From Lytechinus pictus (Eukaryota), in contig NC_087249.1 in the NCBI RefSeq assembly GCF_037042905.1, positions 4,092,001 to 4,156,000 of the forward strand: a stretch of DNA of 64,000 nucleotides, written 5' to 3'. A program made the translations under genes and the position numbers. Shown in pieces: positions 14,037 through 58,609 of the stretch. The notes beneath the pieces are model-generated. The model searched no databases. It saw only the letters and a list, made by a program, of their open reading frames with translations, and was not told where the DNA came from. How positions within the stretch are numbered: position 1 is the stretch's first letter; each line of letters opens with the position of its first letter.

Positions 14037-16360
14037 ATGAAGTTTTGCACCCATCTTTCCATCACGATTACTTTGTTTTATGGTGAGTACGCCATTCATG
14101 AGCTCAGTCTGGCATGCGATGTATAAATTATCTTCAGACCGATTTCCAAATGTTTCCCTATTTCGTTGTTAATGTTACTATTTTTAATTGTCTTACCATG
14201 TCATACATGTCATATCCAATACTAATTTTTGCGGCCCAGGACATGGATCTGAATAGTCTTTCATGTATTGCGATGCCTCCATTTACACATTTTACACAAA
14301 GTATTTGCAAACTTATTTTATCAATCCATTATAGTGAAAGAAAGCCAATGTTTATGGGTGATGTGATATCTCACGTCATTATTATGAAAATTGATTTAAA
14401 GTGAGTTTATATATTTTGATAGTTGATGATGAATTGAGAATAGGCACCTCGTATGGTATATCGTGAAAGATCAGAGACACGAACGGTTATCCTTGGAATA
14501 ATGGGTTTTTAACATTAATTTGAGGTTGTATATCGTTGATTGCCTGTACCAGAATAGTTTATATTGATAGCAAACTTACTATGAGGATGATCCTCAGCAA
14601 CGGGTTCTTGTCATTTTAGGGAGGATCTATCAATCTTGAAAGGAAATTGGTTCATCGCCGTGCTTCATCAAAGGCTTTCCGCTATCGAGAGATCGCTAGG
14701 GTCATTTTCACCCCAGATTTTCTCATTTAAACGATTTTTACTTCACTGCAGTCATTATTGTTTCTAAACAATTTATCATTATATTTTTCATTTTTTTTAT
14801 ATTAATGGATATAGGGGAAATGCGAAATTTATTTTATTGAATATCAATTTGCAGATGAATTGCCGTTATATATTTGGCGACGATGAGTAGAATTAGTTTT
14901 ATATTTTATCAGTGGGCTAAGGGATGACAAATACCATGAATACCCTACCGACTTAAGCTGCTGCTCGCCACACTAAATCCCGTAATATCGAATATCATGT
15001 GCTATGATTATGAAAAACGTATGTTTTGCTTCTCTTTGATGTACGCTACAATTTTGGTTGGTGTTAATGAAATGCGCAATTGTACTATTTTTTATTGTCA
15101 AATGAATGAATATAGCAACTTGTTTTTTCAACTATATTTCAAAAGAAACACGAAAATGCATAAATCAAAGAACAAATTAACTTGGCAATTAGACAATGAA
15201 TACATGTAATTAATGAAACTTTATGATATAAAAAAGTCGTATTTAAAAAAAAACGGGTAAATGATTCCTTAAAATATATGTTAATCCCTTAACTGACGTC
15301 CAATAATTGACACAGTTCCCTTATGTTAGATCTTTTGAACGATCAATGAATGACAAAACACATATATAAAAAAAAATATTTGCTTGAATTTACATTATCA
15401 TTGTTTTCCAGAAAAAAAACATATATGTAAATATAACCAGTAAAATTGCCTTTTGGTCTACACCCACTTTGTTTAGTTTCCGTTTGGTTTAATTCCACAT
15501 GGTATAATCCTACTTCGTCTATCATCAGTTCATCTACTACCCATTTGGTCTTACGGCTATTTAGCGCTCCTATAATTTTGTTTAATTTGCAGTTTGGTTA
15601 TAAGCATTTTATTCAATATCTTCTTGGTCTAGCACTTAAATAGTTGAACTGTTCATGGATTAAAATGTCTGTAAATTGACAAGTCAAAGTAATCAAAAGA
15701 CGAAGTGGAAATCAAATTCGACTTGATGAAACAAAGTAAGTGTAGTGTAGACCAAAAGGATGAAGCCCATGTGGTTGTAGACTATGACAGAAGTGGACCA
15801 ACTGTTTGAATAATTGAGTAACAATAGTAAATACTTTTAATATATACTGATTATTTTTGTTCTTATTTCAATACCTGACAGCTTTATGTTTGAGGATAGA
15901 GGCGAAGCCAGCCCAAGCCCTCTCGAGGCAAACCGCTGTCAACAATATTCCCCTCGCTCAGACACAGATGGAAATGGAAGCAGATAACGATGTCTATGAA
16001 AGCGACATAGAAGAACCCTCCAACAACGACCCCGAAGAAGCGGACAATGAAAACGAAAACGACATTGAAGTCGAATCCGTTGTCGCTGGCGATGCTGATG
16101 CCGATTTAGATGTGATTGAAGTTGATGCCGGACCTCCAAACCCCATTGGTCGTAACGGATGGACAGGATCTGGATTGTGGAAATCAAAAAAGCGAAACGA
16201 ACACAGCTCCTTGGCCACAGAGAGTAAAGTATCCCACATCGGAATTGGTTTTGGGGTCGTCATCCTCGTGATCGCAGTGGTGGTCGTCTCTGGATTAGCT
16301 ATTAAGAGGCCAGGTTCAAGTAATACCAGTAATATACCTCCCGAACTGAATATAGACTAA
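14037..16360 (+). CDS. P16-related Asp/Glu/Asn-rich type-I membrane protein (gene 2); join(14037..14082,15882..16360), 174 aa (in-frame upstream ATGs at 14010 and 14025)
   Basis: Exon 1 MKFCTHLSITITLFY+G then GTGAGT. Acceptor tttcaatacctgacAG ends at 15881. The phase-1 join gives signal peptide ...ALCLRIEA, then RQTAVNNIPLAQTQ, acidic EADNDVYESDIEEPSNNDPEEADNENENDIE, TM IGIGFGVVILVIAVVVVSGLAI, KR and a short tail. AATAAA at 16383. Confidence 0.87.
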
Positions 16361-18937: not shown

Positions 18938-20213
18938 ATGCCTACGTCTTCAACCTTTCTTTGTCTATCGATAATAGTTCTTGGTGAGTAAATTTCGCTA
19001 GCATTTCTGTTTACTGCTGGATTATTCTGAGAAATAATAATATTTCATCTTCATATGTTTTAATTTCTTCTACCTCTTTTGTTAATAGTTTTCTTCTTTA
19101 AAAAAAAACCGAAAGGCATGCTCAATTGTGAAATAAATGCAAATACCGGAAATTTATATGGCATAAATACAATGTACATAGTCATGATATTCGGCAATCT
19201 CCAAAATAACCAAGAGAGTTAAGAAAATGAAATTTATACCGCTTTTGTAATTTTTGTAGACTTGTCCTCCTGGAAAATTTTCCTGTATGTAATTTGTGTT
19301 TACCTCATGAGACGCCACAAACAAAGAAAACATGATATCTGCCAAGTGAATAAATCAAACTTAATACTTATATATTTCAATTAGGTAAATGATAAATGGT
19401 GGTGATTTTTTTACCTGAAAGCATGAGGATTAATTCCTTGCCAAACGGCACTAGCGCACCAAGTGGGTATCGAATCCGGTCACCGGAATCCGAAACCCCC
19501 GCTCTACCGAATGAGCTATTGCGCCTCCAAGAAGATGGATTAATACATGAATAACGAAAATTGTTAGGTGAGTATTAACTGGATAATGTTTTTTCTTCTT
19601 CCTGTTGTTATCAGTCTTGTGCGCCATTGCTGACGCAAGACCATACGGGAAATATCCAACACCAGATAAACCTGAAAAGCCACATGGACCAGAAGGACCC
19701 GTACAGCCATTTGCCTTCTTGAAGACGTTTGGAGCTGGCTTCGTTAATCCTGCACAACCCAAATCTCCCGCAGCCCTCAACCGTCAAACAATCTTTGACG
19801 GTCCATTCAACCAAGTTGACTACCCTGATCAACCAGACATCCCAGATGCTCCTGATATCCCTGACGCACCTGACGCACCCGATGCACCCGACGCTCCTGA
19901 CGCACCGGACTATGAAGAATACGAGCCTCCTGATACACCAGACGTTGGGGCACATGAAAATCCAGGAGTCTTCTCCGATGGTGGATTCGGTTTTCTCGGA
20001 GGAGCTGCCCAAGCACCTTTCATGATGACTGGTGGTAAATCCCCGAGCTCGATGGGTCAGGGGATGATGACCAAATACAGGAAGGGTTCGAGTTCGGGAT
20101 CTAGTGTCGGCATCGCTTTCGCCGTGCTCGCCATCATTGGTTGCACAATTGCACTGGGGGTTTTCTTTTTCAAAAAGTACAGACACCATATTCCGGTTAT
20201 CGTCCTTAAGTAA
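18938..20213 (+). CDS. P16-related Pro/Asp-repeat type-I membrane protein (gene 3); join(18938..18983,19615..20213), 214 aa
   Basis: Exon 1 MPTSSTFLCLSIIVL+G then GTGAGT. Acceptor ttttcttcttcctgttgttatcAG ends at 19614. The phase-1 join gives signal ...VLCAIADA, then RQTIFDGPFNQVD, (PDx)n, TM SVGIAFAVLAIIGCTIALGVFFF and tail KKYRHHIPVIVLK. AATAAA at 20585. Confidence 0.9.
19415..19528 (-). mobile_element. tRNA-derived SINE fragment in the gene 3 intron
   Basis: GGAGGCGCAATAGCTCATTCGGTAGAGC...GGATTCGATACCC followed by SINE body TTTGGCAAGGAATTAATCCTCA. Confidence 0.6.
19818..19943 (+). repeat. 9-bp coding repeat encoding (Pro-Asp-x)n in gene 3
   Basis: CCT/CCA/CCC/CCG-GAT/GAC-NNN units reading DYPDQPDIPDAPDIPDAPDAPDAPDAPDAPDYEEYEPPDTPD. 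Confidence 0.9.
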
Positions 20214-24374: not shown

Positions 24375-25102
24375 CTAACAGTTGGTCATCTTGATGAAAG
24401 GAATACGGAGCTTATTTCTTTTGATGACATACACAGACACTCCGACAGCGGCACCGATCAGAGCGAGCACGGCGAAGGCGATGCCGACACTTGAACTGGA
24501 CGTCGATGCCTTCTTAAGTGGTTCCATTCCAGGGTTCTCACCATTGGGACTGCCAAAGATTGGAAGCTTTCCTCCATGGGCACGGTCGTTGTGACGGTTA
24601 CCCATTGGCTCTACGCCATCACCGTAGTCGCCGACATCAGCTCCCTCAGCACTGACATCGCCTTCCGCTGATGACTCACCAGAGGAACTGCTGTCACCTG
24701 CGCTGCCGCCGGCGTCCATCTGGTTCAAGGGAGCGTCAAACATGTTCTGTTCAGCCGGTGGAGGAATCGCATGTTGGGCCTTGGCGTGTCTTGGGTGGCG
24801 GCCTGAGAGCTTGACGGGATTTGCGTCGACAACCATGCAGTAAGCTGTATAGAATGTATTGAAGTGTAATGCAAAGATAATTAGCAGTATGACATCGGCA
24901 ATTCATTTTTTAAAAATAATTTTCTCTTCATTCATCAGTACAAATAATGATGTGCCCTTTCCGAGACGTATATGTTGTATGCGAGTCACGACAAAGTCTA
25001 CCCTATATTGTAATTAATGACAATTCTTCAAAATCATTTCAAGCGAAATTCTATCGATATTAACCAAATATCAACAAAACAATCATTATGTGGAGGAACT
25101 GA

Positions 25103-36506: not shown

Positions 36507-39095
36507 TTATGCGTTTGAAAGCATTTGGGCGCCATTTTGACGTTTCCTGTAGACAAAGTATCCGACACCTGCTGCTGCTACAACGGCTCCTACGGCAAAG
36601 ATGATGCCAAAGGCCATACCACTCTTCTGCTGTGCGGTCATAGAGCCGAGATTTGAGACTCCGTTGTTGCCGGCACCGCCGCTGTTGTCTTCTGACGAGT
36701 CATCGCTGCTGCCGTCATCGTCAATGCTGTCGTCATCACTGCCAGTGTCGCTGCTGGTGTCAGAACCACCGTAGCTGGTTCCTCCCATTGCATCTGCGCT
36801 GCCAGATGTTCCGTAGTCTGATGTACCCATGGCTCCTCCTCCATAAGCGTCGTTAGCTCCTATCTCACCACCACCACCATTACCTAAGTTGAATTGTGTT
36901 CCATCAGTACCTGGAATTCCTCCTGTACCTGTACCTGGTACGGCTGCTGCTACAGCTGCAAAAACAACATCAAATAACATGGTTAGAGATAGGCACAAAA
37001 CAATATTATGACCAAGGGTGAAACTCTGTCCCTAATACATTCTTACGGGGTGGTCATGAGGACTGACCTTTACTGGCACCATCCGAAAGACATTACCAAA
37101 TCTTGAACCTCGAACCTCTGAATTAGTATGTATAAATATTACAATCAGCCATTATCTATCAACCTATACGGTCTCAAAATAGTACAGTAAACATTGTACT
37201 TATACTATTAAATATTACCCTGATGATATTCTAGATCCTGTAGATATAATCTTTTTCATGATATTATTATGATATAAGACATGTTGATACGTTTTCAAAC
37301 CATACATGCTGACGCAATATCATGAAGGTTACGTGATATATGCGGGTAACCCCTTCAATGCCAACAACGCATGTGACGCTATAATGTTGGTCTTAATATG
37401 TACTGTCAGAACATGAGTCAGTTGATTCGCCTGCGTCATAAGTCGAGGTCAAGAGTGTTATATTTGAACCTTTCACAAGACCCCTCTTCCTGTTTTCAAA
37501 CCACTTACATCTTCAAGGGAGGTTCTCCGAAATTATGTCGTCACTTATTGAAAAGAAAAGAAGTTCCGCTCTTTTTACTCCATTGTACACATCAATCATA
37601 TAGGATAATAGTAATGACTGAATGATTACAAAGTTAAATTTCGGTGTTAGATATGAGGGCAAACCTTGCGAGATGATCAGTTTCAGGCACATAATGTAAG
37701 ATCGATGACATATCTCATTCATTCCACATAATTGTATATTGTAGATAGATTGATAATTACGCTGAATTACAATTGATTGTATCTTGGGCTTTGATAATAA
37801 AAAGGGTCATCAAAATAAATGATTGTAATTACAGTGCAACTAATGGAATAGAACTGCATAATCATTGAATTTTGATCTAATAATCACTAATGAACTTGTA
37901 GTTTTTTTTATTTACAGTATTTCATCGGAAGTCTGAAGTATGTTAAAAAATAAAACATTTTCTAACTCGTCAAGATGATGAAGGATTATTGGACAATGTT
38001 GTACCCATGTTTATTTTCTAAATAAATAAATCTTGGGGAGGAGAAACTAGTGGTTTCCCCAGCATCAAGTTGAACGCGTATGTATATATCCCTCATTCTT
38101 TTTATGCTATATATCTTTTAATGAGTGAAAAAAAAAATTGAAAAGTAAAAAAAAAATCCAACATCGAACTTATCAGGAAATTGCTCATAGAAGTCTGGTA
38201 AACATTGGATAAACAGAGGATCATCAAATGAGACGGAAACTATGTTTTACTGATTTAATGATTGCTGCCGTTTTGAGGAAATCTAAAAATGTCTCCTCCC
38301 CTTACACGACAAAAACAATTCCTATATAATGATAAGATTAGGATTATTAGGATCTGCCATTCAATATCATGTTTTCAGAAATTTTCATCTCTTAAATAAA
38401 GGATATACAGTTGTTATTTAAATCGCTATTCCATGAAGTAATTTAATATCTAATCTTGGATTTGGGTTAAACCATCAAATTAGTGATAAAATTTGCCACC
38501 TTGCCCCGTAATGTGTTTAAGGGAAGAACTATAGTTAATGCCCAGATACCATTAATAAAATGGTTCTCTTAAATCTCACCATGTAAAATGTGACGATTGT
38601 CAATGACACATCAACTAATGACTGAATTATTTTTAGATTTTCCTGGCTCAGACTCATATTCGGCAACCACGTGCTATGTCTTAGTCACATGTAGTTCTGT
38701 CAGCGCGGTTTAGCGGATTGTGAACAAGAACTTATTTTAAGATTTGTAAGACGCAGAAGCCCTGTACATTGAAATAAATTAGTGTTGAACTTTCTTTTGC
38801 TGTTATCAATAACATAATACAATACAACGAACAGATAAAAGAAACAATATCAAATATGGTAAACGTCTATGTCAAAGGTAAAGAAAATACGATTAGAAAT
38901 GTAAAAAAAATGTGCATTAGAAGTAACTTATTATTTTAAATAGACAAAAAAAAAACATCACAAAATGCATATGCAGATAACGATAACAAATGTCATCACA
39001 ATTAAATAAGGATGATTAACATATGCACAATCGATGAAGTCCGAAATTGCCAACCACTTACCAACAAAAGCAAATAAAGCGATGATGGTCTTCAT
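36507..39095 (-). CDS. P16: P16 skeletogenic biomineralization transmembrane protein (gene 5); complement(join(36507..36955,39062..39095)), 160 aa
   Basis: Exon 1 ttaccATG encodes MKTIIALFAFV+G then GTAAGT. Acceptor gttgtttttgcAG precedes 36955. Product MKTIIALFAFVAVAAAVPGTGTGG... has a Gly-rich then Ser/Asp-rich region (DTSSDTGSDDDSIDDDGSSDDSSED), TM SGMAFGIIFAVGAVVAAAGVGYFVY and tail RKRQNGAQMLSNA. Recognised from memory as the sea urchin P16/UTMP16 type; no search was run. Confidence 0.92.
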
Positions 39096-43900: not shown

Positions 43901-45262
43901 CTTATATCATAAACATTGTCACCTGCTTTTTACCGATTCTCTGTGCTGAACATGTTTATTATGTACACGAGGTATGACGCTGTAGAAATGCATTAACTGA
44001 TCGAACTTTGTTCTCAGAAAAAAAGCTTCTTGTTTTGGTTCGAAATGATATCTTACACCACGATTACTGTCTTTGATGCACGAATGTGAGCTTCTTGGTT
44101 GACCAAAAGATATAATTTGCTCAGTTGAGTACGATGCTAGAATAAATCTTGTAGAAAACATTAATGTACTGTATACTTTGAAACTATCAGATAACAGTTT
44201 ACATTTCTCTAAAGATCGTGTAAAGGCGGGAATCAATCAATTATCTTTGTTAATTGGAAGTAGAACTTGGCCAGTGTTCAGTAATCACTGTCATATATGA
44301 GGACTGGTGACTTCATAACTGTACATGCATATAGACCCAATAAATCAAACATTATACGTGTTATACTTATGAGAAGCATATTACATAATGCTTGTTTGCT
44401 ATATGCATTGTTGCAATTTCTTTTAAAAGCGTCAGGATATTTGTCATAAATTACGAGTGCTGCAAGAGCTTACATAATTATGATACACGGTTCATCAAGA
44501 ATGTATAGAATAAAGTAGTACTTAACCATTGTAATTAACATGATAAGATTTACAAGAAAACAAGAAACGTATTTATTCATAAACATGAATTCATTCATTC
44601 ATGCTGTCACCGTTCGTTTCTTCTAGATTATGATCCAACTCTTAGTTTCCTTATGATTGAAAAGGGGGTTAGTTCAATGCTAAACCCTTAGAAATCCATC
44701 AAACATTTATGTAGTGCATGGGGGAGGGGAACAAAATAGTAAATCACGAGACATAATCCACAGACCACGCCCATAGCAGCCGCCATGCCAACATACAGTT
44801 GAATGAAAATAACACATCTAATTCACAAGCTTGTATTATACATTAACAACAACAACATCAACAAGGCACCTAGACCATACTTTTTATGGATTTAAAGTAG
44901 TGTACATTTTTATTTTATAAATAAAAAATGCTAGACCCCTCCTGAACATGACCGAACAATCACCTTTATCATGTTTATCCAATATTTTAAATGTCAGATA
45001 CATTGTCAAATAGAATATTAATTATTTTATAGGCAAAGTGATGAGTGCTCGGAATTAATTATAACGCGTTCATACATACTTTGATAATCAATCAATTCAA
45101 TCAATCATTTATACAAATCACATCAATAAAAGTGACAAGACCAGGCTTTCATAGCCGCGGTGATGATTAAATTTGATGGTTGTGTAAAGTTAATTTTCTT
45201 GTGAACAACGTTGCTTGAGATGAAACGTGCTAAAAGAATATTTTCATCTCGGCAACACTAGT

Positions 45263-48200
45263 TCATGGAGCATAAATTAAACAGGTGACTATAAATGTTC
45301 CAGGTAGAATTCCCCAATTTGCCCTCCAAAAAGTCCCAATGCTCTTAAATCTCGAATTTGCTGAGCTCGTCAGGTTGCTAGCCAGCAGGGCAAACTCCGA
45401 TTGCATTTCGGATTCTACTTCGGATTCGGATACAGATGTGGATGATTCGGATTCAGATTCAGATTCCACCTCCGATTCAGCATCCGACTCTTCGCTACTA
45501 TCTCGCCTTCGTCTGCTCAATGATAAAGCTTTGATAATGTGATTCAAATACTCATCATCTCCTTCGGTTTGTGTAAGATCCGTTAACCGTAATCTGGTTT
45601 TCGAGTTAGACCATAATGACACATTTGAGCCCCTATAGTACTTGGTTGACGCAATATTCTTTTCAAAATGGCGGGTTCCTCCTTCAGAGATGGATGCACT
45701 GCCTGAAAACATAAATGATCAAACGATAAAAAAAAATATTTTGATATATACTGTAATGATTTTGATGAATAATATCTGTAATACATTATTAGCTATATTA
45801 ACTTGGTAGTCATTTTAATCATATTCAATATATTGAGTATATGGCACAGCGACTCTTCCTCGCCGTTTATTTATCGTCTCAGAATTTTTGTGACGTAATT
45901 ATCGGTAATGACTTGTCGTCGCTTTGTTGTACAGTCTACGGAAATTCAATAATAAAAATAATATAGCTTTTACGAGGCGCCAGCTGCCTAAAGGGACTTT
46001 CACAATAGCTCTTGCGATCGTTTGTGATAATTTGGTCACAATTATGTTGAACAGAATGGCAACGGTTGTAAGCAGTTGCACCACCAATTGTGAAAGGTGC
46101 ATTTACGTGCTAGGTGCATTGGTACACTGCATCAGTTAAAATAGTCACTTTCAACAGATATGTATCACTCAGTAATACTTCATGTTCGATAGACTTAAAC
46201 TTTCAAGTCTTCGGTAATGTACATCAGCTGTTTTTTATTTCAACAACAAATTTTAATCTAATGATTTTTTTCATTTAGATTTGAATTTCTGTTGAAATAA
46301 ATGAACATAAATTTGTCAATTTGTGTTGAATAAATTTGGTATTGTTTCGTTAAACATCATGAAAAAAATGAAGATTGAATGGCCAATACAGCGAATCTGT
46401 AATTACTGTCAAACCTGATTTAATATGGAAACCAAGGGTACCGACAAGTGAAATATCGCATTTTAACACGAGCTATAAGAATAGGTTTTAAAAATAATAA
46501 TATATAGCGTTTATGAGGCGCCAATTTATCTAGTTGCCTGTTCAATGGCGCACTATAAATTACCCTGGCTGAAGCTCCAGCTGCTAAAGGCGCTTGGTGC
46601 ATTCAAGGAATTAATCCTGCCGGGTACCCATTCACCTCACCTGGGTCGAGTGCAGCACAGTGTGGTTAAAATTCTTGCTGAAGGAAAACACGCCATGGGT
46701 AGCATTCGAACCCACGACCCTCTGTTTGAAAGGCGAGAGTCAGAACCACTAGACCACGACGCGCCCACATAACATTTATATAATGTACATACATTCAACC
46801 GTATGGTAATAAGAAATTGTACCAATTCACAATACAACGTTCAAGAACTGACAGAACCAGGTGCCGCAGAAAACAAGCAACAAAAATACAAACCGAGGGC
46901 GTATCAAAGTTTAAATAGCAATTGAATTAGGTGTATGCTATTTCTGTAAGAACGCAATCATGACTAACTATACTGTGATATATTCAGATAGAGGGGTAAG
47001 CTAAGAGATGGCAAGAACCCCTTACGAGGATGGATGACGTGAAGTTGATAATACATCTCTAAATTTCCAAACTTCGACAATAATCGACAAAAATATTGTC
47101 AAAAAACCGTTAAGAAGATATGCACTGCTCCCAACTTCGACCTATGCCACTCTCAGATAGTTTTGACCGACCTATGTGTGAGTAAGCATTACGGACCTTA
47201 ATTGTGTTCATTGAGATATAACCTTTATTAACTGAACTTAAAATTTTGTTCCACCAAAATAACTGTTTATCCAACCGAACTTATATGTTTTTCTAACTGA
47301 GACTGTATGAAATAGCATTTTTTTTTCTTCAAAATTCTATAACATTGGTTTCTAGCTGTCATTTGCTCCAAAAATGGTAGGTCGCCAATCATGCCGATTA
47401 AAGAAACAATTTTAAACAACTCATTTAAGGCTGAATTACAGAAGGGACAATTGCAATATTCCTTGATGAATGCTATAAGCATAGAAATACAAAGTGCATT
47501 GTTTCATCATAATATCATCTACCTGTTCTCTTTATACAGTACATGTCATGAAATTAAAAGCAGGGGAGAGAGAAGGGAAGATGAAAAAGTCAGGGACAAT
47601 TTGAAAGTTTAACGGTTACACAAAACATAAGAAATTAGTAACATTATTATGAACCTTCATCGCTTGATGAGTAATAGATATTCGTTATGAACATGTCAGA
47701 ACGTTAACGTAACGAGACAGTCAAGAGTTAGTGAAAAATCGTCATTCATATCTTCATCAACGTTAAATTCATCTCGGCATTACTTTTTAAAATTTATTTA
47801 CTATCATTCTGTCAATCTTTCTTTCTCATTTCGATTGGAAACAAAAGAAAGTTACCAAAAATGATGTGTTTATATGAAGTGCTTACCGTTATTTAATACG
47901 ATCACGTTACACACGTGACACTATATCGAATACACATGATTTACACATATAGATTGAAGCAGTGTGATCTTCATTTGTCATTAATGGCTTGAACTCATTC
48001 AGCACGTGTTATTTCGTTGTGATCGGAAAAAGTGGACTTCTAACTCCTAAAGCAAAAGCAGGCAAACAATTTAAAGTAATTATCAGATGTTTACTGTGAC
48101 GTCATTTTGTTTGACCCATTTCAGAAAGACATATTATGATAAAGATTTAAAAAGGGTGAAGCAATTCTGTAATCGTTTTTATATTTCTTTTTAAACCTAT

Positions 48201-49974
48201 GTCAAAAATCTTTATGACGCAGGAATAATGTACTGTACCCGTTTCCCAGGTATATTGAACACGTTCTGTAGCAATAGGGAACAGAACGTAAGAGGCTACT
48301 ATCAGGAGTACCGTGTCCACTTACGTCATCGTTCCGACTAGTGCAAGTCAGATTTGATTTATGTTCTACAGAGTTATTTAAAGGAAATCATAAAGCAATT
48401 CCTAAATACTTTGTATCTAAATTAACAGCCCAACTAATTGTCCACGCCACCATCTTTCATCAATGAGCTATGACGTAATTCAGTTAGTTCTATCATGATA
48501 TGATCCTACGTCTGTTCTATTATCTCATGTCACAAAGGTAGCAACGGTATCAACAGGTTATTCAAATAATCCTGGCTGGACCCCCAAACTTTACACAAAG
48601 GTGAACATGATTGGGGTCCCGTGTTCTTTGATATATTACTTTGTAATATCGTCATGTAATTTATACGAACAACACATATGAGGAAGGTATCAATCTACGT
48701 TGTGTAGTTCAGGAGCGGTAACCGATTATTTAAACAAAATATAAGGAAAAGTTTGGAAAAGAAATTATTGGAAAAACATGACGTCTCAAAATGGACTTTG
48801 TTTTCAATAAAACAGTGGATGGATCACTAAATTAATAAGGTGAATTGGGGTAATGGCTTTATATTTATGATTTTTACAAACGAAAAGCGAAGACTGAGGC
48901 ATATATTTGAATGACGATCTGGTATGTGGAAATTCATTCGAAATTCGTTACCAGACTTCCATTAAAGAGGTCGATCCAGGGCGGGGTTGGGGGGGGGGGG
49001 TTGGGGTGGGGTGAATGGGCCTTTCCCCCTACCCCGACTTTTTTTTTTACTTGACAGAACCCCCTAGTCTGTCTCGGATCTGCCCCTGAGCCCTCATAGT
49101 CATTTGCAACCAAAATAATAATATTAGATAATATACCTCATACGGCTCACTCTTAAAATGTTGGGCAAAGTACTGTTCACACAACAATTGGTTAAAAAAA
49201 TTATTCAACTCTGGGTAGTTTTCAACCAAAGCACACATTATTGGTTTTAAAATACTCAGAAATTGATAAAGTTTTAACAAATTTTTGTGTAGACATTATG
49301 TTGCCCAACATTTTTAAGAGTGCACTAGATGGATGTTATTAACATATTTATCACAAGCTTTGATTTTTACTTGAAGACGTGAACATGCAGAGAAACTACG
49401 TACATGAATTTGTGTGTAAGATTCACTTCACAGAGAACTTAAGTATCCATGTTAAGAACTCATTCTTTTCTCCCACTTATCCAAAAGAACAACAATTTAG
49501 TAAACACTTACATGACATGTGAACCTATAAAGCTCTAACTTCTTTCTTTCTTTTACCTATATTCCATTTACATTTTCTTACTTTCAGCTTACAGAGACTA
49601 TGCTATGATACGCGCTTGACATATAGTGCATGATATGCTTTAAATGAATGACGGCCATGTCACGGTAGGTCATGTGATATTATGAGCATATAGCCCTGAA
49701 GTTAATCATTGAGACAGATAAGTCAATTTAAACAAAATTAATAAGTAAATATAAAGTATGAAAGTGACACTCCTCACTCAGTACTATCATTGATTGTTAA
49801 CGAACACTCCTTGAATTCTCAATACATCAGAGTACAACAATTTACATTAAGAAGCCTTGTGAAATATTCGCAAAAAGAGATGCCTTAACACGTACAGGTC
49901 AGATACTTACTGCAGACAGAGTATGTGAAGAAGACAAACGTAAAAATGACGCACGCCAAAACATGACATCTCAT
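45263..49974 (-). CDS. Secreted or GPI-anchored Ser/Glu-rich acidic protein with tetrabasic convertase site (gene 6); complement(join(45263..45702,49911..49974)), 167 aa
   Basis: Exon 1 acaataATG encodes MRCHVLACVIFTFVFFTYSVC+A then GTAAGT. Acceptor atttatgttttcAG precedes 45702. The phase-1 join is in frame with the 149-aa ORF: RRRR-DSSEESDAESEVESESESESSTSVSESEVESEMQSE, then a hydrophobic C-terminus WGILPGTFIVTCLIYAP with no cytoplasmic tail. Confidence 0.75.
46490..46766 (-). mobile_element. Near-complete tRNA-derived SINE in the gene 6 intron
   Basis: GGGCGCGTCGTGGTCTAGTGG (A-box), GGTTCGAATGC (B-box), body GACCCAGGTGAGGTGAATGGGTACC, tail ATAAACGCTATATATTATTATT. Confidence 0.85.
49148..49322. 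mobile_element. 175-bp MITE with CACTCTTAAAA termini
   Basis: CACTCTTAAAATGTTGGGCAA ... TTGCCCAACATTTTTAAGAGTG. Confidence 0.7.
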
Positions 49975-50133
49975 TATTGTTTCTGGGGTTTGCGGTAATG
50001 GTGAAAAATTCCAACAAATCGACTGACTTTGAAAAATAGACCCACAACTGCCAAAGATGGTAAGACAATATATGTCCACTAACGAGGAAAATTGTTATAT
50101 TTTAGTTGGTTTCTGTGTGCTCGTAGTGTACTC

Positions 50134-50179
50134 TATATACTACGACGATAACCAAAAGGATGTCCATACTTAAGGGCGG
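50134..50179 (-). promoter_or_regulatory. Candidate gene 6 promoter (TATATA plus GC box)
   Basis: TATATA at 50134-50139, ~160 nt upstream of ATG 49974; GGGCGG at 50174-50179. Confidence 0.4.
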
Positions 50180-51450
50180 GACCTCTTTGGAAATTCAACT
50201 TAATTCAATTGTTTTCCGTTATTACGGCGTTGTAAAAAGAAAATACTAATAAGTGAAATGTCTTGTTAAAGAGAAAAATAAAATGTAGATGTTGACCGGC
50301 TGTTGAACAATAGACTGTGTGGCGTATTCTAAGGTTTCTTAATGCATTCAATGTTTATCAAGGCTCTTGTATTATGTTCCTTACACCCTCAAAGAATCGT
50401 ATTAGTTCTCCTTCTTCTTCTTCAGTGATATCTTAAGCGATGACTTTCAAAGGGCTCTGAAGCCTATCTCGAAGATGAGCTTAGGCATAATAATTTTTAG
50501 ACATATATTCTTGTAGAATTTCCTTGGAATATTCTCTGTCAGTCGATTTACTTTATTATTCCAACTCTCATTAGAAATATTATCTCATTTAAATTTCGTT
50601 AGAGAGACAAGTGTCTTGGTAGCGTTAATGAACAACACATCACCAGAGACATTGATGGGTGCCTCTCCTTTTAGCACGACACACATGTGAATACAAGTAA
50701 AGTGACGAGTTTGAATCGAGGAAGCAGTGGATTTGCGCCTTCGACAAACCCTTAATGAATATGGCCGGTCTTCGGGAATTCCCACAGTGAGGAAAGCGTA
50801 ATTACAAATCCCAAATGTCGCAAGAATTTAGATCAATAATTACAGCTTCCAAGTTTAGCATTGTTTTATGGTCGAAGAATCTCCACAATTTTGCGATCAT
50901 ATTTCGCCGTGAAAATATAATTTTTATGGGGATAGAGGTTAAAGTGGGTTTTCAAAATAATCACATCTGGAAATCTTTTAAAGTTTGCTCAATATCAATA
51001 ATATGAAATTATGAATAGACTTATATCTTATATTTCTATTAATTCTGAATAGGATATGGTAACATACCAAGCAGTGACCAATTTCTTGCATGGTCAATAC
51101 TTAACCCTCCCAAATCGTATTGATGTACAATACGATACATGTTTGTTATTACTGACACCCATCGACCTCCTATGTTGCCCATCTAGTTTATTTTGGTCAT
51201 GACCATATCCGAGGTTCCTTAAAGAGTGTGTGCTATTTTTAGGAGTCTGTGGTTGCTCTTCTTGACGTAGGTAACCAATTTAAATGCCGGTATAAATCCG
51301 TATCGACCGGCATATGTGTCTGAGTCAGCCCCTTTCTTCTCATCCCAGGTGGAACCATGTGTTTACAGTATGTAAAGGCTACCACACAGTTCCCGATATT
51401 TTTCAAAGAATAATGATAATTTATTATCTAACAAACTATATATATATATA

Positions 51451-53200: not shown

Positions 53201-56200
53201 GAGAGTTTACACTGCAGTCCATTTCGACACTGACTCTTGTAACAAATTATACACAAAAGAATTTACAAGTCACTCCATTTCGACACGGAATCATGTTACC
53301 AATTGCACATAGGAATGTTTACAAGTTACTCCATTTCAACATGGACTCTTGTTACAAATTATAGGTAAAAGATTTTACAAGTCACTCCATTTCGACACGG
53401 ACCCATGTTACAACATTGTACATAAGAAAGTTTACAAGTCAATTCATTTGGACACGGACCCATGTTACAAACTATTCATAAGAGAGTTTACAAGTAACTC
53501 CATTTCGACACGAACTCATGTTACAATATTGCACATAAGGAGAGCTTACAAGTCACTTCATTCTGACACGGACTCATATTACAAATTGTACACAAAAGAG
53601 TTTACAAGTCACTCCATTTCGACAAGGATTCATATTACAAATTTTACATAGGAGAGTCTACAAGTCACTCCATTTTGACATGAACTCTTGTTACAAATTT
53701 TACATAGAAGAATTTACAAGTCAGTTCATTTGGACATGGGCTCACGTACAAATTGTAGATGGGAGAGTTTACAAGTAACTCAATTTCGACACGGACGCAT
53801 GTTACAAACTGTACATAGGAGAGTTTACACGCTACGCCATTTCGACACGGACCCATGTTACAAATTATACATAGGGGAGTTTACTTGTCAATTCATTTTG
53901 AAAGGGACTCATAATTCAAATTGTACACAAAAGAGTTTACAGGTCACTCCATTTCGATACGGACACTTGTTACAAATTGTACACAAAAGAGTTTACAAGT
54001 CACTCCATTTCGACACGGACTCATGTTGCAAACTGTACATAGGAGACGTAAGTCACTTTATTTTGACACGGACTCACATACAAATTGTAGATGGGAGAGT
54101 TTACAAGTAACTCCATTTCGACATGGACTTATGTTACAAATTGCACATAAGAGAGTTTACAAGTCACTTCATTTCGATACGGACCCATGCTCCAAATTGT
54201 ACTTAGGAGTTTACAAGTTACTCCATTCCGACACGGACTCATGCTCCAAATTGTACATAGGAGTTTATAAGTTACTCCATTTTGACACGGATTCATGCTA
54301 CAAACTGTACAGTGGAGAGTTTACTAGTTACTCCGTTTCGACACAGACTTATGGTACAAACTGTTCATTGGAGAGTCTACAAGTTACTCTATTTTGAGAT
54401 GAATTCTTGTTACAAATTGCACATAGAAGGGTTTACAAGTCAATTCATTTGGATACGGACTCATGGTACAAACTGTACATTGGATAGTTTTCAAGGTAAT
54501 ACATTTCGACACGGACTCATGCTACAAATTGTACACAAAAGAGTTTACAAGTCACTCCATTTCGACACGGACTCATGTTGCAAACTGTACATAGGAGATG
54601 TAAGTCACTTTATTTTGACACGGACTCACATACAAATTGTAAATGGTAGAGTCTACAAGTAACTCCATTTCGACATGGACTTATGTTACAAATTGCACAT
54701 AAGAGAGTTTACAAGTTACTCCATTTTGACACGGATTCATGCTACAAACTGTACAGTGGAGAGTTTACTAGTTACTCCATTTCGACACGGACTTATGGTA
54801 CAAACTGTACATTGGAGAGTCTACAAGTTACTCTATTTTGAGATGAATTCTTGTTACAAATTGCACATAGAAGGGTTTACAAGTCAATTCATTTGGATAC
54901 GGACTCATGGTACAAACTGTACATTGATAGTTTTGTAGGTAATACATTTCGACACGGACTCATGCTACAAATTGTAGATAGGGGAGTTTACAAGTAACTC
55001 CCTTTCGACACGAACTAAAATTGCATCATTGTACATAGGTGAGTTTATAAGTCAATTCATTTTGACACGGACTCATGCTACATACAAAATTTTCGTAGAA
55101 AAGTTTACAAGTTACTCTATGTCAACATGGACTCTTGTTACAGATTGAAGATAAGAGAGTTTACGTTACAAGTCACTTCATTTTGACACGGACTCATATT
55201 ACAAACTGTACATAAAAGAGTTTACAAGTCACTCCATTTCGACAATGACTCATATTACAAATTGTACATAGGGGAGTCTACAAGTCACTCCATTTTGACA
55301 TGAACTCTTGCTACAAATTTCACAGAGTAGAGTTTACAAGTCAGTAAACTTGGACACGGACTCACGTACAATTTGTAGATAAGAGAGTTTACAAGTAACT
55401 CCATTTCGACACGAACTACTATGACAATATTGTACATATGTGAGTTTATAAGTCACTTAATTTTGACACGGACTCACGTACAAATTGTACATAGGTGAGT
55501 TTAAAAGTCACTCAATTTCGACACGGATGCATGTTAAAAATTGTACATATGAGACCTTACATGTTACTCCATTTCGATACGGACCCATGTTACAAATTGT
55601 ACATAGGAGAGTTTAAAAGTCACTCCATTTTGACACGGACTCATATTACAAATTGTACATAGGAGAGCTTACAAGTTATTCCATTTCGATACGGACTTAT
55701 GTCACAAATTGTACATAGGAGAGTTTACAAGTCACTCCATTTCGACACGGACGCATGTTAAAAACTGTACATTTGAGACCTTACATGTTACTCCATTTCG
55801 ATACGGACCCATGTTACAAATTGTACATAGGAGAGTTTAAAAGTCACTCCATTTTGACACGGACTCATATTACAAATTGTACATAGGAGAGCTTACAAGT
55901 TATTCCATTTCGATACGGACTTATGTTACAAATTGTACATAGGAGACTTTACAAGTCACTCCATTTCGACACGGACCCATATTACAAATCGTAGATAGGA
56001 GAGTTTACCACGGACTCATGCTCCAAATTGTACAAAAAGAGTTTACAAGTTACTCCATTTCGACACGGACTCATGCTAAAAACCGTACATAGGAGAGTTT
56101 ACAACGGACTCATGCTCCAAATTGTACACAAAAGAGTTTGCAAGTTACTCCATTTCGACACGGACTCATGATACAAACTGTACATTGGAGAGTTTACAAG

Positions 56201-56290
56201 TCACTCCATTTCCACACGGACTCGTGTTCCCAAGTGTACATAGGAGTTTACGAGTCACTCCATTTCGACATGGACTTATGTTACAAATTG
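53201..56290. repeat. 56-bp minisatellite, about 55 diverged copies, with higher-order repeats
   Basis: Consensus GAGAGTTTACAAGTCACTCCATTTCGACACGGACTCATGTTACAAATTGTACATAG; ATTTCGACAC at 53221 and 53277 (period 56). Confidence 0.95.
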
Positions 56291-57664
56291 TATGTATGTT
56301 ACAAATTGTCAGTGGATATCGAGAACGAAAGAAAGACAAACAATTATTATCGAGGAAAAACAAGATTCGAAATCTATGTTAGACGATGGATATTCATTAT
56401 CGTTTTTATGGCAAGGGCCCAAGCACTTCATATAATTGTCATCGTATGAAGAGAGACGTTGAATAGCTATTTACATACATTGGGGGGGGGGGGGGGAGTG
56501 GCTGAAATTATCCAAATGATATCACCCAACTGCCTCACATGTGTTGAGATAGCAATGGACACGATATAATAACCTGCGATATTACAATAAATAAGCGCAT
56601 TTTCTCCCTTAAGATGTATTTACTTTAACGACTCTTCTAATAGTTGAAGATTTTCTCACCCAGATGTAATAATTGTAATTATGGAACGGAGAAGGTGGAG
56701 AACGCAAATTAAACAGATCTAACAACCAGACTATCTAAATCAGGGTATGCTCGATTATGCAGCAGTTTCTTTGAGGTCAGAACCAGTTCAACCACCGACA
56801 ATAATTTGCTGGTAACACGTGAGTCTGTGTAATAATGGAATGACTTGTATCAATACCACTCTTTTCTATCGACGACACAATATGACAAAATACATCTTTC
56901 TTTATGTTGTTCTTACACCATGACTGTGGGGTATGTATATGTCTGCCTTTCTCTCCCCTCTCTTTCCTTCTCTATACACGTACCTGTGTCTCTCTTTTCT
57001 CTATCATTCTCCCCTTCTCTCTATACTAAATGCATGCGCATGAGTCTCTTTCTCCCTCTCTCCTGTCCTTTCTGTAATGCTTACCTTCTCCTTTTTTGTA
57101 AATATCTTTTTCTATCTCTCCCTCCCTCTCTTCTTCCGAATTTCGCTTTCTCTTTATCTCAACCGATCAAAATTTCTGTCTAGTTTTCCCTTTTCTTGGC
57201 ACCGTTGATGAGCTTTTAAAAGGCATGTGTATTTCTTCTTTGAATTTTTCGTTTGACCCAAACTAAGATGATTGAAATTCAAATCAAATAGAATATGACA
57301 ATAATATATAGAAGACAAAAACAAGTGAATGTTGTTGCGGTACATTTTGGTAAGTTACACATTTCGGTAAATTACCCAAATTGTCACCAAAGTTTGCCGT
57401 AACAAATTTGATTTTTGCCATACATTAAAATTTCAAAGTAATAACAAAAATTGTAAATGATGCATATTATCCAATAACATTTTGCCTTAAATTTTCATAT
57501 AATTAGAACAAAATATAAGATGCATATAAAATCAACAAACAATTTTCAAATTTGACTCTTGGTTCTAAATTAAACACACCCCAAAAAACAATAATTGAAG
57601 AGTGTGGATCTCTCAAATAAAAGATTTATTCTAAATATTTAGATTTATTTTAAATAAAACTATT

Positions 57665-57930: not shown

Positions 57931-58609
57931 ATTTAAATAATCCTAATTCAAATTACATATAAAGAGATAAATATACAAATGCACATTCATCCAAATAAAA
58001 AAAACCATTGTACTTGTTATCAAAATGAAACATTTGACCTTTGTTGCTCCCCAACATTCTAAGATAAATATATTTTTTCTGTATTGTATTTTGTACTATG
58101 CTTTGTCTTCTGATGTTTTGTGATTTCTACTGTAATAATATCTTTGACATCTTCTATGTACGAATGTGGAAATAAACTAGTGAACTGAACTTAATGATAA
58201 AACATACATGTTTTATAGGCATTGTGTGTGAAATTATTTCAGATTAAATCTAGTGCTACAATTACCCCCCCCCCCCCTCCTTCTCTGTCTCTCTTTTGTG
58301 TGAACACGAGAATCTGGAATATCGGAAATTTAAATAATTTTAAGCATGCCAATACATGTATGGTATTTTGCATAAAACATATTCAAATTCCAAAGAGCAA
58401 TCACCAAAAAGAATGAAAGGCCTAGTTTCAGTTCGAATAAAAATTCCTATTTAGATCATGTCAACCACTATGATAAGTAGGATGTGGCATAGTCCCATTC
58501 ATCTAAGTTTATGAACACTTAAGTGTTCACTTATAAAAAGAGAATATGAACCTTTCCCTTCACTGTGGAGGGAAATTCGGCTAAATTTTATAAATGCTGT
58601 AAACAGTGA

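What the first reader, a model, noticed from the sequence alone, without database searches (positions are those of the whole stretch)
45263..49974. Gene 6: orphan-like pro-protein with furin-type RRRR exposing a 36-aa Ser/Glu tract, probably GPI-anchored
Seen: signal peptide; a moderately basic pro-region with N-V-S sequon; RRRR (45503-45514); DSSEESDAESEVESESESESSTSVSESEVESEMQSE (45395-45502); an N-L-T sequon; small residues SSANS; a spacer; and a terminal hydrophobic stretch with no charged tail. Known: R-x-[KR]-R is the furin consensus and this C-terminal layout matches GPI signals. Inference: cleavage would unmask a highly phosphorylatable polyanion on the cell surface, i.e. an activatable mineral-binding peptide. 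It lacks the TM and FDxP signatures, so it may be an unrecognised, separately derived cluster member.
Basis: partly seen in the sequence, partly recalled or inferred. Interest (0 to 1): 0.75.

Follow-up and report, generated by a model that had tools for sequence, protein, structure and literature searches.

The report
Orphan urchin secreted acidic pro-protein
This is a real, spliced sea-urchin gene for a small, floppy secreted protein whose one strongly conserved part is a four-arginine protease-cutting site joined to a very acidic Ser/Glu stretch; it may be a cleavage-released calcium- or mineral-binding peptide, but where it is expressed and whether it carries a lipid (GPI) anchor remain untested.

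Summary
The window is Lytechinus pictus. Exon 1 (49974-49911) and exon 2 (45702-45263), minus strand, are joined across a GT..AG phase-1 intron, and RNA contigs from two runs show that joint. The product is 167 aa: a signal-peptide-like N-terminus, RRRR (45514-45503), a Ser/Glu tract (45502-45395), an N-L-T sequon and a hydrophobic C-terminus.

Orthologues exist in L. variegatus and S. purpuratus, both annotated "uncharacterized". A profile search of 1.84 billion representative proteins found nothing else. There is no Pfam match and the predicted structure is disordered.

A 55-aa core is 94-98% identical between the two genera: acidic DDEY, a predicted helix, RRRR and the polyanion. The flanks are 50-57% identical and the last 10 residues 33%. 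Between the two Lytechinus species, omega is about 0.06 in the core and 0.64 outside it.

- **GPI anchor:** unresolved and weakened. The orthologues have K/E/H/R inside the "hydrophobic" tail, and L. pictus carries a 1-nt insertion that shortens it.
- **Phosphorylation:** only 2 of 13 Ser fit the strict S-x-E motif.
- **P16-like neighbours:** no sequence kinship; the link is position only.
- **Tissue of expression:** could not be tested.

Best reading: a lineage-restricted, convertase-processed acidic secretory protein that works like MEPE-ASARM or statherin. Moderate interest.

The parts
49911..49974 (-). Exon 1 coding part: ATG plus 21 codons and 1 base (MRCHVLACVIFTFVFFTYSVC + first base of Ser22). 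This is the signal-peptide-like N-terminus. The 5' UTR continues upstream of 49974.
   Evidence: translation, donor cA|GTAAGT. RNA contigs cover 49910-50050 with 0 mismatches and run about 133 nt further 5'.
45703..49910 (-). Single phase-1 intron, 4208 nt, GT..AG. It contains a highly expressed dispersed repeat (about 46496-46819).
   Evidence: joint 45701/49910 'skips 4208, CT..AC (cut +1)' in X1 and X2; the same donor and acceptor sequences in L. variegatus L001.
45263..45702 (-). Exon 2 coding part: residues 22-167 plus the stop codon (TGA at 45265-45263). The 3' UTR continues below 45263 for at least about 1.4 kb.
   Evidence: contig record 1 of X1, 2121 nt, lies on 45200-45701 and runs a further 1345 nt 3'.
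45515..45568 (-). Conserved block upstream of the basic site: TEGDDEYLNHIIKALSLS (residues 67-84). It holds an acidic DDEY motif and a predicted amphipathic helix.
   Evidence: all but one of the 18 residues identical in three species; S. purpuratus also has a 1-aa insertion; the only segment with pLDDT above 50, helix 71-90.
45503..45514 (-). RRRR (residues 85-88), a candidate proprotein-convertase (furin-type R-X-K/R-R) cleavage site.
   Evidence: coordinates. (invariant in L. pictus, L. variegatus and S. purpuratus).
45395..45502 (-). Ser/Glu polyanion DSSEESDAESEVESESESESSTSVSESEVESEMQSE (residues 89-124). It has no basic residue, and cleavage would leave a DSSEE N-terminus.
   Evidence: 94-98% identity to S. 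purpuratus across the core; omega 0.06 in the core.
45374..45382 (-). N-L-T sequon (residues 131-133), conserved in all three species.
45266..45373 (-). C-terminal region SSANSRFKSIGTFWRANWGILPGTFIVTCLIYAP. It has small-residue candidate omega sites (S134-S-A, S142-I-G), a conserved WRANWG motif and a hydrophobic end. It is a candidate GPI signal, unresolved.
45274..45276 (-). T-run that is one base longer in L. pictus than in L. variegatus. The frameshift ends the protein at ...LIYAP* instead of ...LIMLHELVLSR*.
   Evidence: CDS alignment. RNA contigs match the window with 0 mismatches and 0 gaps over 45200-45701.

Best explanation
Gene 6 is a real, transcribed, two-exon gene found so far only in camarodont sea urchins (Lytechinus and Strongylocentrotus). 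It encodes a 167-aa, largely disordered secretory pro-protein.

**Shown:**
- The splice.
- Orthologues in two other species.
- A core of about 55 aa that is almost invariant over the Lytechinus-Strongylocentrotus split, while the rest of the protein drifts. The core is DDEY, a predicted helix, RRRR and a 33-36-aa Ser/Glu polyanion.

**Inferred mechanism:**
1. The N-terminal hydrophobic segment takes the protein into the ER.
2. A furin-type proprotein convertase cuts after RRRR in the late secretory pathway.
3. This releases a C-terminal fragment that begins DSSEE... and carries about 15 negative charges, more if its serines are phosphorylated.
4. The fragment binds Ca2+ or carbonate-mineral surfaces, much as the protease-released ASARM peptide of MEPE or the DSSEE N-terminus of statherin bind mineral.

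The invariant helix just before the site probably serves recognition or masking before cleavage. The position next to a cluster of P16-like small acidic membrane-protein genes makes a skeletogenic role the leading guess. No expression data support it yet.
For: - **Gene and splice:**. The GT..AG joint appears in RNA contigs of two samples, with 0 mismatches.
- **Species and collinearity:** (neighbouring ORF 100% identical to L. pictus LOC135154112). (85-90% nt collinearity with L. variegatus, including the P16-like gene downstream).
- **Orthologues:** (L. variegatus LOC121414960, 94%; S. purpuratus LOC100891392, 64%).
- **Constraint:** (core 94-98% identical against flanks of 50-57%). (omega 0.06 in the core against 0.64 outside it, with dS not reduced in the core, so the constraint acts on the protein).
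- **Disorder and orphan status:**
- **Secretory context and analogues:**
  - Urchin fam20C is a direct Alx1 target (PMC7719703), and a FAM20C-like protein is present in tooth matrix (PMC2830187).
  - The ASARM peptide lies just downstream of a protease site and binds mineral when phosphorylated (PMC3427007).
  - Pif is cleaved at RMKR into a carbonate-binding part (PMC11291548).
  - The statherin N-terminus is DSSEEKFLRR (PMC8541499).
- **Restricted expression:** one search shows contigs in X1/X2 but zero reads on the exons in the sampled 6% (about 1.3 Gb) of X5 and X6.
Against: - No evidence on tissue or cell type. The gene ids and peptides occur in none of the papers or held supplements searched.
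- Cleavage is inferred from a motif alone.
- The constraint covers both sides of RRRR, which could equally mean the block works uncut.
- Only 2 of 13 Ser fit S-x-E, so heavy Golgi phosphorylation is not assured.
- No palindromic Alx1-type site lies near the promoter.
- The omega contrast rests on few substitutions (Fisher p = 0.12).
- Signal-peptide and GPI predictors could not be run.
Confidence: 0.5

Rival explanations
1. One reading: after furin cleavage the acidic fragment stays on the cell surface through a GPI anchor added at the SSANS or S-I-G region, giving a surface-tethered, activatable polyanion on skeletogenic cells.
For: - An N-terminal signal-like segment plus a C-terminal hydrophobic end with no cytoplasmic tail in L. 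pictus.
- Small-residue triplets (S134-S-A; S142-I-G) at plausible distances: 25-33 residues to the C-terminus, with a 19-residue uncharged run in L. pictus.
- The last 10 residues are poorly conserved (33%) and tolerate a frameshift, as expected for a removed signal that needs only hydrophobicity.
Against: - In L. variegatus and S. purpuratus the uncharged run is only 9-10 residues. K or E sits before it, and H/E/R lie inside or after it.
- Mean hydropathy of the last 15-17 residues is modest, 1.3-1.8.
- WRANWG, in the supposed spacer, is invariant, which is unusual for a discarded signal.
- No predictor or experiment was available.
Confidence: 0.3
2. A granin-like or peptide-precursor protein of the regulated secretory pathway (neural, endocrine or other gland cells). 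The acidic tract drives Ca2+-dependent aggregation or sorting, and RRRR is a prohormone-convertase site. On this reading the gene has nothing to do with the skeleton, and its place beside the P16-like genes is a coincidence.
For: - Signal peptide, disorder, an acidic tract and a polybasic site are also the hallmarks of granins and neuropeptide precursors (own knowledge).
- The DDEY motif resembles tyrosine-sulfation sites of secreted peptides (inference).
- Expression is sample-restricted.
- No sequence kinship with the P16-like neighbours.
Against: - There is only one basic site.
- No repeated peptide copies, no Gly-Lys/Arg amidation signal, and no cleavage site between the tract and the C-terminal part.
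- The hydrophobic C-terminus is not typical of granins.
- The sequence was found in no paper searched, neuropeptide papers included.
Confidence: 0.17
3. RRRR is not cut. The helix, the basic tetrad and the polyanion act together as one uncleaved module, for example an electrostatic clamp, a Ca2+-dependent coacervation motif or a partner-binding motif in a secreted or membrane-held protein.
For: The near-invariance covers 18 residues upstream of RRRR as well as the tract. The low-confidence model continues the helix through RRRR (residues 71-90), which would make the site less accessible.
Against: Four consecutive Arg in a luminal, mostly disordered protein are an optimal convertase motif, and acidic P1' residues are tolerated by furin-type enzymes (own knowledge). 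The model's confidence is too low (pLDDT 38.8) to argue about accessibility.
Confidence: 0.12
4. Not a functional protein-coding gene: a transcribed young ORF whose Ser/Glu tract is a translated (GAATCY)n microsatellite.
For: Orphan status. The L. pictus product is absent from the protein collection although the neighbour's is present. Tract length varies by one ES unit in S. purpuratus.
Against: - The ORF, the splice sites and the core are kept in three species of two genera.
- Core omega is 0.06 with normal dS, and core identity is 94-98%.
- TRF does not call the tract a tandem repeat.
Confidence: 0.03

Closest known systems
MEPE and its ASARM peptide (vertebrate SIBLING family)
   Same: A disordered secreted protein in which an acidic Ser-rich peptide lies immediately downstream of a protease site. 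It is released by cleavage, and the phosphorylated peptide binds mineral and inhibits mineralisation (PMC3427007). ASARM begins R-DDSSES; here the sequence is RRRR-DSSEES. MEPE was also the top named ESM-Atlas feature neighbour of residues 23-125, but at a meaningless score of 0.55.
   Different: No detectable homology. The protease is cathepsin B, not a convertase. ASARM is Asp/Ser-rich and sits at the C-terminus, and the mineral is phosphate. Gene 6 is Glu/Ser-rich, internal, followed by a hydrophobic tail, and comes from a calcite-forming animal.
Statherin (human salivary phosphoprotein)
   Same: The mature N-terminus DSSEE is identical to the predicted neo-N-terminus after RRRR. In statherin this phosphoserine pair is the mineral-binding end (PMC8541499, PMC5830524).
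   Different: A five-residue match in a biased tract. There is no homology, and statherin's N-terminus is exposed by signal-peptide removal, not by a convertase.
Pif (pearl-oyster nacre protein)
   Same: An invertebrate carbonate-matrix pro-protein cut at a basic site (RMKR) into an N-terminal part and a crystal-binding part, Pif 80 (PMC11291548).
   Different: Pif is large and has VWA and chitin-binding domains. Gene 6 has no domains and is 167 aa. No homology.
P16 and P16-like small acidic transmembrane proteins of sea-urchin skeletogenic cells (the neighbouring genes)
   Same: Genomic neighbourhood. The same two-part gene plan (leader exon plus one body exon), small size, acidic Ser-rich low-complexity region, and echinoderm restriction. 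P16 is a PMC-enriched biomineralisation gene (PMC13200730).
   Different: No sequence similarity. No 20-plus-residue TM helix with a basic cytoplasmic tail, no FDxP-type N-terminal motif, and an unrelated leader peptide. The P16-like proteins have no polybasic site.
MSP130 family (GPI-anchored PMC surface glycoproteins) and phosphodontin (acidic tooth phosphoprotein)
   Same: These are the known sea-urchin precedents for, respectively, a lipid-anchored skeletogenic surface protein and a very acidic secreted phosphoprotein (PMC2909932, PMC2830187).
   Different: No similarity. MSP130 is large and not a polyanion. Phosphodontin has 35 repeats and an Asp-rich C-terminus, and no convertase-plus-tail layout.

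Membership tests
P16 / P16-like family | Detectable sequence similarity to family members | tested here: not met
   blastp of gene 6 against the five P16-like ORFs of the window gives a best E of 0.25. By contrast g1, g3 and g4 hit each other at E 1e-7 to 1e-9.
P16 / P16-like family | Single C-terminal transmembrane helix (about 21-23 aa) followed by a short basic cytoplasmic tail | tested here: not met
   the terminal hydrophobic stretch is 11-19 residues, with no tail in L. pictus. The P16-like ORFs end ...VGIAFAVLALIGAAVGVSVYVIKRNKLRIPFIK....
P16 / P16-like family | N-terminal FD.P..Q.D-type motif after the leader | tested here: not met
   The motif is present in g1, g3 and g4 (LFDIPFDQTD, IFDGPFNQVD, MFDAPLNQMD) and absent from gene 6.
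Proprotein-convertase (furin-type) substrates | R-X-K/R-R motif in a protein that enters the secretory pathway | tested here: met
   RRRR at residues 85-88, invariant in three species. The N-terminal h-region VLACVIFTFVFF with small residues at -3/-1 (V-C-S|S) was judged by inspection only; no SignalP was available.
Proprotein-convertase (furin-type) substrates | Actual cleavage at the site | not testable with these tools
   Needs protein-level data. The held supplements of the S. purpuratus spicule and phosphoproteome papers contain no peptide of the orthologue. However, the gene may not have been in the Glean3 database those studies searched, and the tract has no tryptic sites.
GPI-anchored proteins | N-terminal signal peptide plus omega-site triplet of small residues | tested here: met
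   S134-S-A136, A136-N-S138 or S142-I-G144, at 25-33 residues from the C-terminus. Judged by rule of thumb only.
GPI-anchored proteins | Uninterrupted C-terminal hydrophobic stretch of about 10-20 residues without charges, conserved as a property among orthologues | tested here: inconclusive
   the uncharged run is 19 aa in L. pictus, but 10 aa (TFIVTCLIML) in L. variegatus and 9 aa (TIIATCLVL) in S. purpuratus, with K/E before it and H/E/R after it. Mean Kyte-Doolittle hydropathy of the last 15-17 residues is 1.3-1.8.
GPI-anchored proteins | Positive call by a trained predictor, or PI-PLC release | not testable with these tools
   NetGPI, PredGPI and big-PI are not available offline.
FAM20C (Golgi casein kinase) substrates / SCPP-like phosphoproteins | Clusters of S-x-E/pS motifs | tested here: inconclusive
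   only S90 and S91 (in DSSEE) fit S-x-E. The (S-E)n run has S at +2 but no E-seeded start. 8 sites fit S/T-x-x-D/E. The motif definition is taken from PMC8348777.
FAM20C (Golgi casein kinase) substrates / SCPP-like phosphoproteins | Homology to the vertebrate SCPP/SIBLING genes | tested here: not met
   no Pfam match (Osteoregulin and the others absent) and no relative among 1.84 billion representatives.
Neuropeptide / granin precursors | Several mono- or dibasic sites flanking one or more peptide copies, often with a C-terminal Gly for amidation | tested here: not met
   a single polybasic site, no repeated peptide and no G-K/R motif.

The most novel reading that the evidence does not exclude
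Camarodont sea urchins evolved, from no recognisable ancestor, a convertase-activated polyanionic peptide that is a functional analogue of vertebrate ASARM or statherin. It is kept masked by an invariant helix and basic tetrad until it is cleaved in skeletogenic cells, and it then regulates amorphous-carbonate or calcite deposition. It may be held at the cell surface by a lipid anchor. It sits beside the P16 cluster as part of a co-regulated biomineralisation neighbourhood.
Probability: 0.22. Interest if true: 0.7.

Novelty: new member of a known kind. Interest (0 to 1): 0.45.

Why it matters
Sea-urchin skeletogenesis is a leading model for gene-network control of biomineralisation. Even so, the effector proteins that actually touch the mineral are still poorly catalogued. 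One reason is that very acidic, trypsin-resistant, lineage-restricted proteins escape both proteomics and homology-based annotation.

This gene is annotated only as 'uncharacterized' in two species. Its product is missing from the protein collection for L. pictus. I found it in no paper.

If it is expressed in calcifying cells, it would be a compact, testable case of protease-gated release of a mineral-binding polyanion in an invertebrate. It would also be a clear example of convergence with vertebrate SIBLING and salivary peptides.

The sharply bounded 55-aa invariant core gives a precise target for knock-out, peptide and antibody experiments in L. pictus, which can now be bred and edited. 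If it is instead expressed elsewhere, it is simply one more orphan secretory protein.

Tried and rejected
1. **Pfam scan**: only sub-threshold noise.
2. **ESM Atlas**, whole protein and residues 23-125: best scores 0.69 and 0.55, far below the level that shuffled proteins reach. The MEPE top hit is a curiosity, not evidence.
3. **Structure:** the AlphaFold2 model has pLDDT 38.8, so no fold search was run.
4. **Paralogues or kinship with the P16-like ORFs**: none. A weak hit at 58275-58358 (E = 0.4) is not an exon.
5. **Naming the nearest neighbour g5 (36507-36998)** by protein search: no hit passed, probably because of its biased composition. So I could not confirm which ORF, if any, is P16 itself. 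g4 returns only 'uncharacterized' names. L. variegatus P16 is LOC121416200 according to PMC13200730.
6. **Literature and supplements:** searches for LOC121414960, LOC100891392, XP_003725269 and peptide strings found nothing. Several supplements are not held or are truncated, so this absence is weak evidence.
7. **Alx1-type palindrome TAATNNNATTA**: 4 in the window against 6.1 expected, none in the promoter. This gives no cis-regulatory support.
8. **S. purpuratus locus** for synteny: not on record.
9. **Earlier scan findings**: nothing bearing on this gene. Two notes on other pieces of the genome describe acidic tooth-matrix gene clusters; they were not used.
10. **Rejected readings:** nuclear or nucleolar protein (RRRR as a nuclear-localisation signal with CK2 sites), because of the N-terminal hydrophobic leader and the positive-inside orientation. 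Antisense ORF 45285-45542 (Ser/Asp-rich), which is only the mirror image of the tract.


Full report
**1. What is in the sequence**

On the minus strand an ATG at 49974 opens a 64-nt coding stretch. It ends at a consensus donor (cA|GTAAGT, exon end 49911).

A polypyrimidine tract and AG precede 45702, from which a 440-nt stretch runs to a TGA at 45265-45263.

Joined in phase 1, the two pieces give a 504-nt CDS and a 167-aa product.

- RRRR at residues 85-88 (45514-45503).
- The 36-aa tract DSSEES...EMQSE at residues 89-124 (45502-45395), with 15 D/E, 15 S/T and no K/R.
- N-V-S at 48-50, N-L-T at 131-133 and SSANS at 134-138.
- A final GILPGTFIVTCLIYAP.

The segment between the leader and RRRR has pI 10.1. 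The part after RRRR has pI about 4.

**2. Is it a gene?**

Yes. Laying public RNA data on 45200-50050 gave one assembled contig in each of two samples (X1, 2121 nt; X2, 1256 nt).

Each contig lies on 45200-45701 and on 49910-50050 with no mismatch or gap, and skips the 4208 nt between. The skipped ends are CT..AC on the plus strand, which is GT..AG on the coding strand, and the cut can be placed one base to the right, which is exactly the predicted 45702/49911 joint.

The contigs run about 133 nt further 5' and up to 1345 nt further 3'. The mRNA is therefore at least 2.1 kb, with a long 3' UTR.

Two deep 2026 total-RNA runs (X5, X6; about 1.3 Gb sampled from each) put no read on either exon. 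Expression is therefore sample-restricted. The run labels are coded, so I cannot say which tissues or stages they represent.

**3. Whose genome, and what surrounds it**

A neighbouring ORF (24375-24836) is 100% identical to Lytechinus pictus LOC135154112, so the window is L. pictus.

The L. variegatus locus that encodes the orthologue (L001, chromosome CM031019.1) is collinear with window 35.8-56 kb at 83-90% nucleotide identity. The collinear stretch includes the 56-bp satellite upstream and the next gene downstream.

The window carries five ORFs for small acidic proteins, at about 3.3, 15.9, 19.6, 24.4 and 36.5 kb. Each ends in a transmembrane helix and a short basic tail. Three of them are mutually similar by BLAST.

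I could not confirm which one, if any, is P16 itself.

**4. Relatives**

A word-seeded search of 5.8 billion proteins found two relatives:
- L. variegatus LOC121414960: 173 aa, 94% identical.
- S. purpuratus LOC100891392: 185 aa as predicted, 64% identical. Its true start is probably the second Met.

A full HMMER profile search of 1.84 billion cluster representatives found only their own cluster.

Pfam gives nothing. The ESM Atlas gives nothing above noise and rates the protein as poorly structured, pLDDT 0.53. AlphaFold2 on the three-sequence alignment gives pLDDT 38.8, with only a helix at about residues 71-90 rising above 50.

The L. pictus product itself is not in the protein collection although its neighbour's product is. 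This suggests the gene is not annotated as coding in L. pictus (inference).

No paper in the library mentions the gene ids or any of four diagnostic peptide strings.

**5. The pattern of constraint is the most informative result**

Percent amino-acid identity, by region:

| Region (L. variegatus numbering) | Lytechinus vs S. purpuratus |
|---|---|
| Signal peptide, 1-22 | 64% |
| Pro-region, 23-66 | 50-52% |
| Core, 67-121 (TEGDDEYLNHIIKALSLS-RRRR-DSSEES...EVESEM) | 94-96% |
| C-terminal part, 122-163 | 55-57% |
| Last 10 residues | 33% |

Between L. pictus and L. variegatus a Nei-Gojobori count gives 4 synonymous and 1 non-synonymous change in the core (dS 0.135, omega 0.06). Elsewhere it gives 5 synonymous and 11 non-synonymous changes (omega 0.64).

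The counts are small (Fisher p = 0.12), but they agree with the deeper comparison. Synonymous change is not reduced in the core, so selection acts on the peptide and not on an overlapping nucleic-acid element.

The functional unit is thus the block that spans the basic tetrad: 18 conserved residues before it and 33 after it. The upstream residues include an acidic DDEY and a predicted amphipathic helix.

**6. Cleavage**

RRRR satisfies the furin-type consensus R-X-K/R-R. It lies in a protein with a secretory-type leader and is invariant. Acidic P1' residues occur in well-known convertase substrates (own knowledge).

Cleavage is therefore the most economical reading, but it is inferred.

The conserved upstream helix could be a recognition or masking element. 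Alternatively it could be a sign that the block works uncut.

**7. Phosphorylation**

The secretory-pathway kinase FAM20C targets S-x-E/pS (PMC8348777). Only S90 and S91, in DSSEE, fit that motif.

In the (S-E)n run the +2 residue is Ser, and the chain has no E-seeded start. As a result, strict hierarchical logic reaches only 2 of 13 Ser. Eight sites fit the CK2-type S/T-x-x-D/E motif.

Even unmodified, the tract carries 14-15 negative charges in 33 residues.

The context is favourable if the gene is active in skeletogenic cells. Urchin fam20C is a direct Alx1 target (PMC7719703), and a FAM20C-like protein occurs in tooth matrix (PMC2830187).

**8. GPI anchor**

In L. pictus the geometry is acceptable. 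There are small triplets S134-S-A or S142-I-G, a polar spacer, and a 15-19-residue uncharged end.

In the orthologues the uncharged run is only 10 residues (L. variegatus TFIVTCLIML) or 9 (S. purpuratus TIIATCLVL). K or E sits in front of it, and H, E and R lie inside or after the remainder.

L. pictus also has one extra T in the run at 45276-45274. This shifts the frame and ends the protein at LIYAP instead of LIMLHELVLSR. The RNA contigs agree with the window.

Tolerance of this change, together with the 33% identity of the tail, fits a signal that needs only hydrophobicity. It equally fits an unimportant tail. WRANWG, in the supposed spacer, is invariant.

I rate the anchor at about 0.3. 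A trained predictor and a PI-PLC test are needed.

**9. Relation to the P16-like neighbours**

There is no similarity in the leader, the body or the tail. The defining TM-plus-basic-tail layout and the FDxP-type motif are absent.

What is shared is position, the leader-exon-plus-body-exon plan, small size and acidity. 'Cluster member' is justified only in the positional sense.

**10. What it works like**

The nearest functional parallels are these:
- **MEPE-ASARM.** An acidic Ser-rich peptide lies just downstream of a protease site, is released by cleavage, and binds mineral when phosphorylated. Its sequence is RDDSSESSDSGSSSESDGD (PMC3427007).
- **Statherin.** Its mature N-terminus DSSEE is its mineral-binding end (PMC8541499, PMC5830524).
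- **Pif.** It is cut at RMKR into a framework part and a carbonate-binding part (PMC11291548).

None of these is a relative. These are analogies of layout.

**11. Verdict**

- The gene, the splice, the convertase motif, the polyanion and the orphan status hold.
- The GPI anchor, heavy phosphorylation, descent from the cluster and the skeletogenic role are open or weakened.

The most likely mechanism is a lineage-restricted secretory pro-protein cut after RRRR to release a DSSEE-headed polyanion that binds Ca2+ or mineral (confidence about 0.5). The main rivals are a granin-like secretory protein unrelated to the skeleton and an uncleaved basic/acidic module.

The decisive missing datum is where the gene is expressed.

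Noticed in passing
window 46496-46819 (inside the intron of gene 6): A dispersed repeat with tRNA-like box sequences (gtggtctagtggttc...gggttcgaatgc). It draws an assembler word depth of tens of thousands in X1/X2 and read depths of up to about 300 in X5/X6, from many diverged copies, with loose ends on both sides. ARAGORN finds no intact tRNA. It looks like an abundantly transcribed SINE family.
   Followed up: partly
window 53201-56292: A 56-bp satellite, about 50 copies at 76% match, about 3 kb upstream of gene 6. It occupies the same position in L. variegatus (L001 4763-8413), so the array predates the split of the two Lytechinus species. Its long '+' ORFs (FRHG.MLQ.VH.RVYKSLHFDTD...) are repeat artefacts.
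   Followed up: partly
window 45274-45276: One-base length difference in a T-run between L. pictus and L. variegatus. It changes and shortens the last residues of the protein. The downstream L. variegatus reading frame is still recognisable in the L. pictus 3' UTR.
   Followed up: yes
window 3313-3888, 15857-16360, 19605-20213, 24375-24836, 36507-36998: Five ORFs for small acidic proteins ending in a TM helix plus a basic tail. g1, g3 and g4 are related by BLAST (E 1e-7 to 1e-9). g2 and g5 share only the architecture. g5 found no relative at all in the large protein search, probably because of its composition.
   Followed up: partly
window 45263-49974: The L. pictus product of gene 6 is absent from the 5.8-billion-protein collection, while the L. 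pictus product of the neighbouring gene (LOC135154112) is present. Gene 6 may be unannotated as coding in the L. pictus annotation.
   Followed up: partly
window 49975-50184: The 5' UTR region contains an upstream ATG (about 50170) opening a short ORF of about 21 codons, and a TATA-like tatata at about 50136-50141. Both RNA contigs end about 133 nt upstream of 50050. Whether that stretch is contiguous with the genome could not be checked.
   Followed up: no
window 45285-45542 (+): The antisense strand of the Ser/Glu tract reads as an 85-aa Ser/Asp-rich ORF. It is a mirror image of the coding tract, not a gene.
   Followed up: yes
window 45548-45559 (residues 70-73, DDEY): A Tyr preceded by three acidic residues, invariant in three species. 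It resembles tyrosine-sulfation sites of secreted proteins.
   Followed up: no
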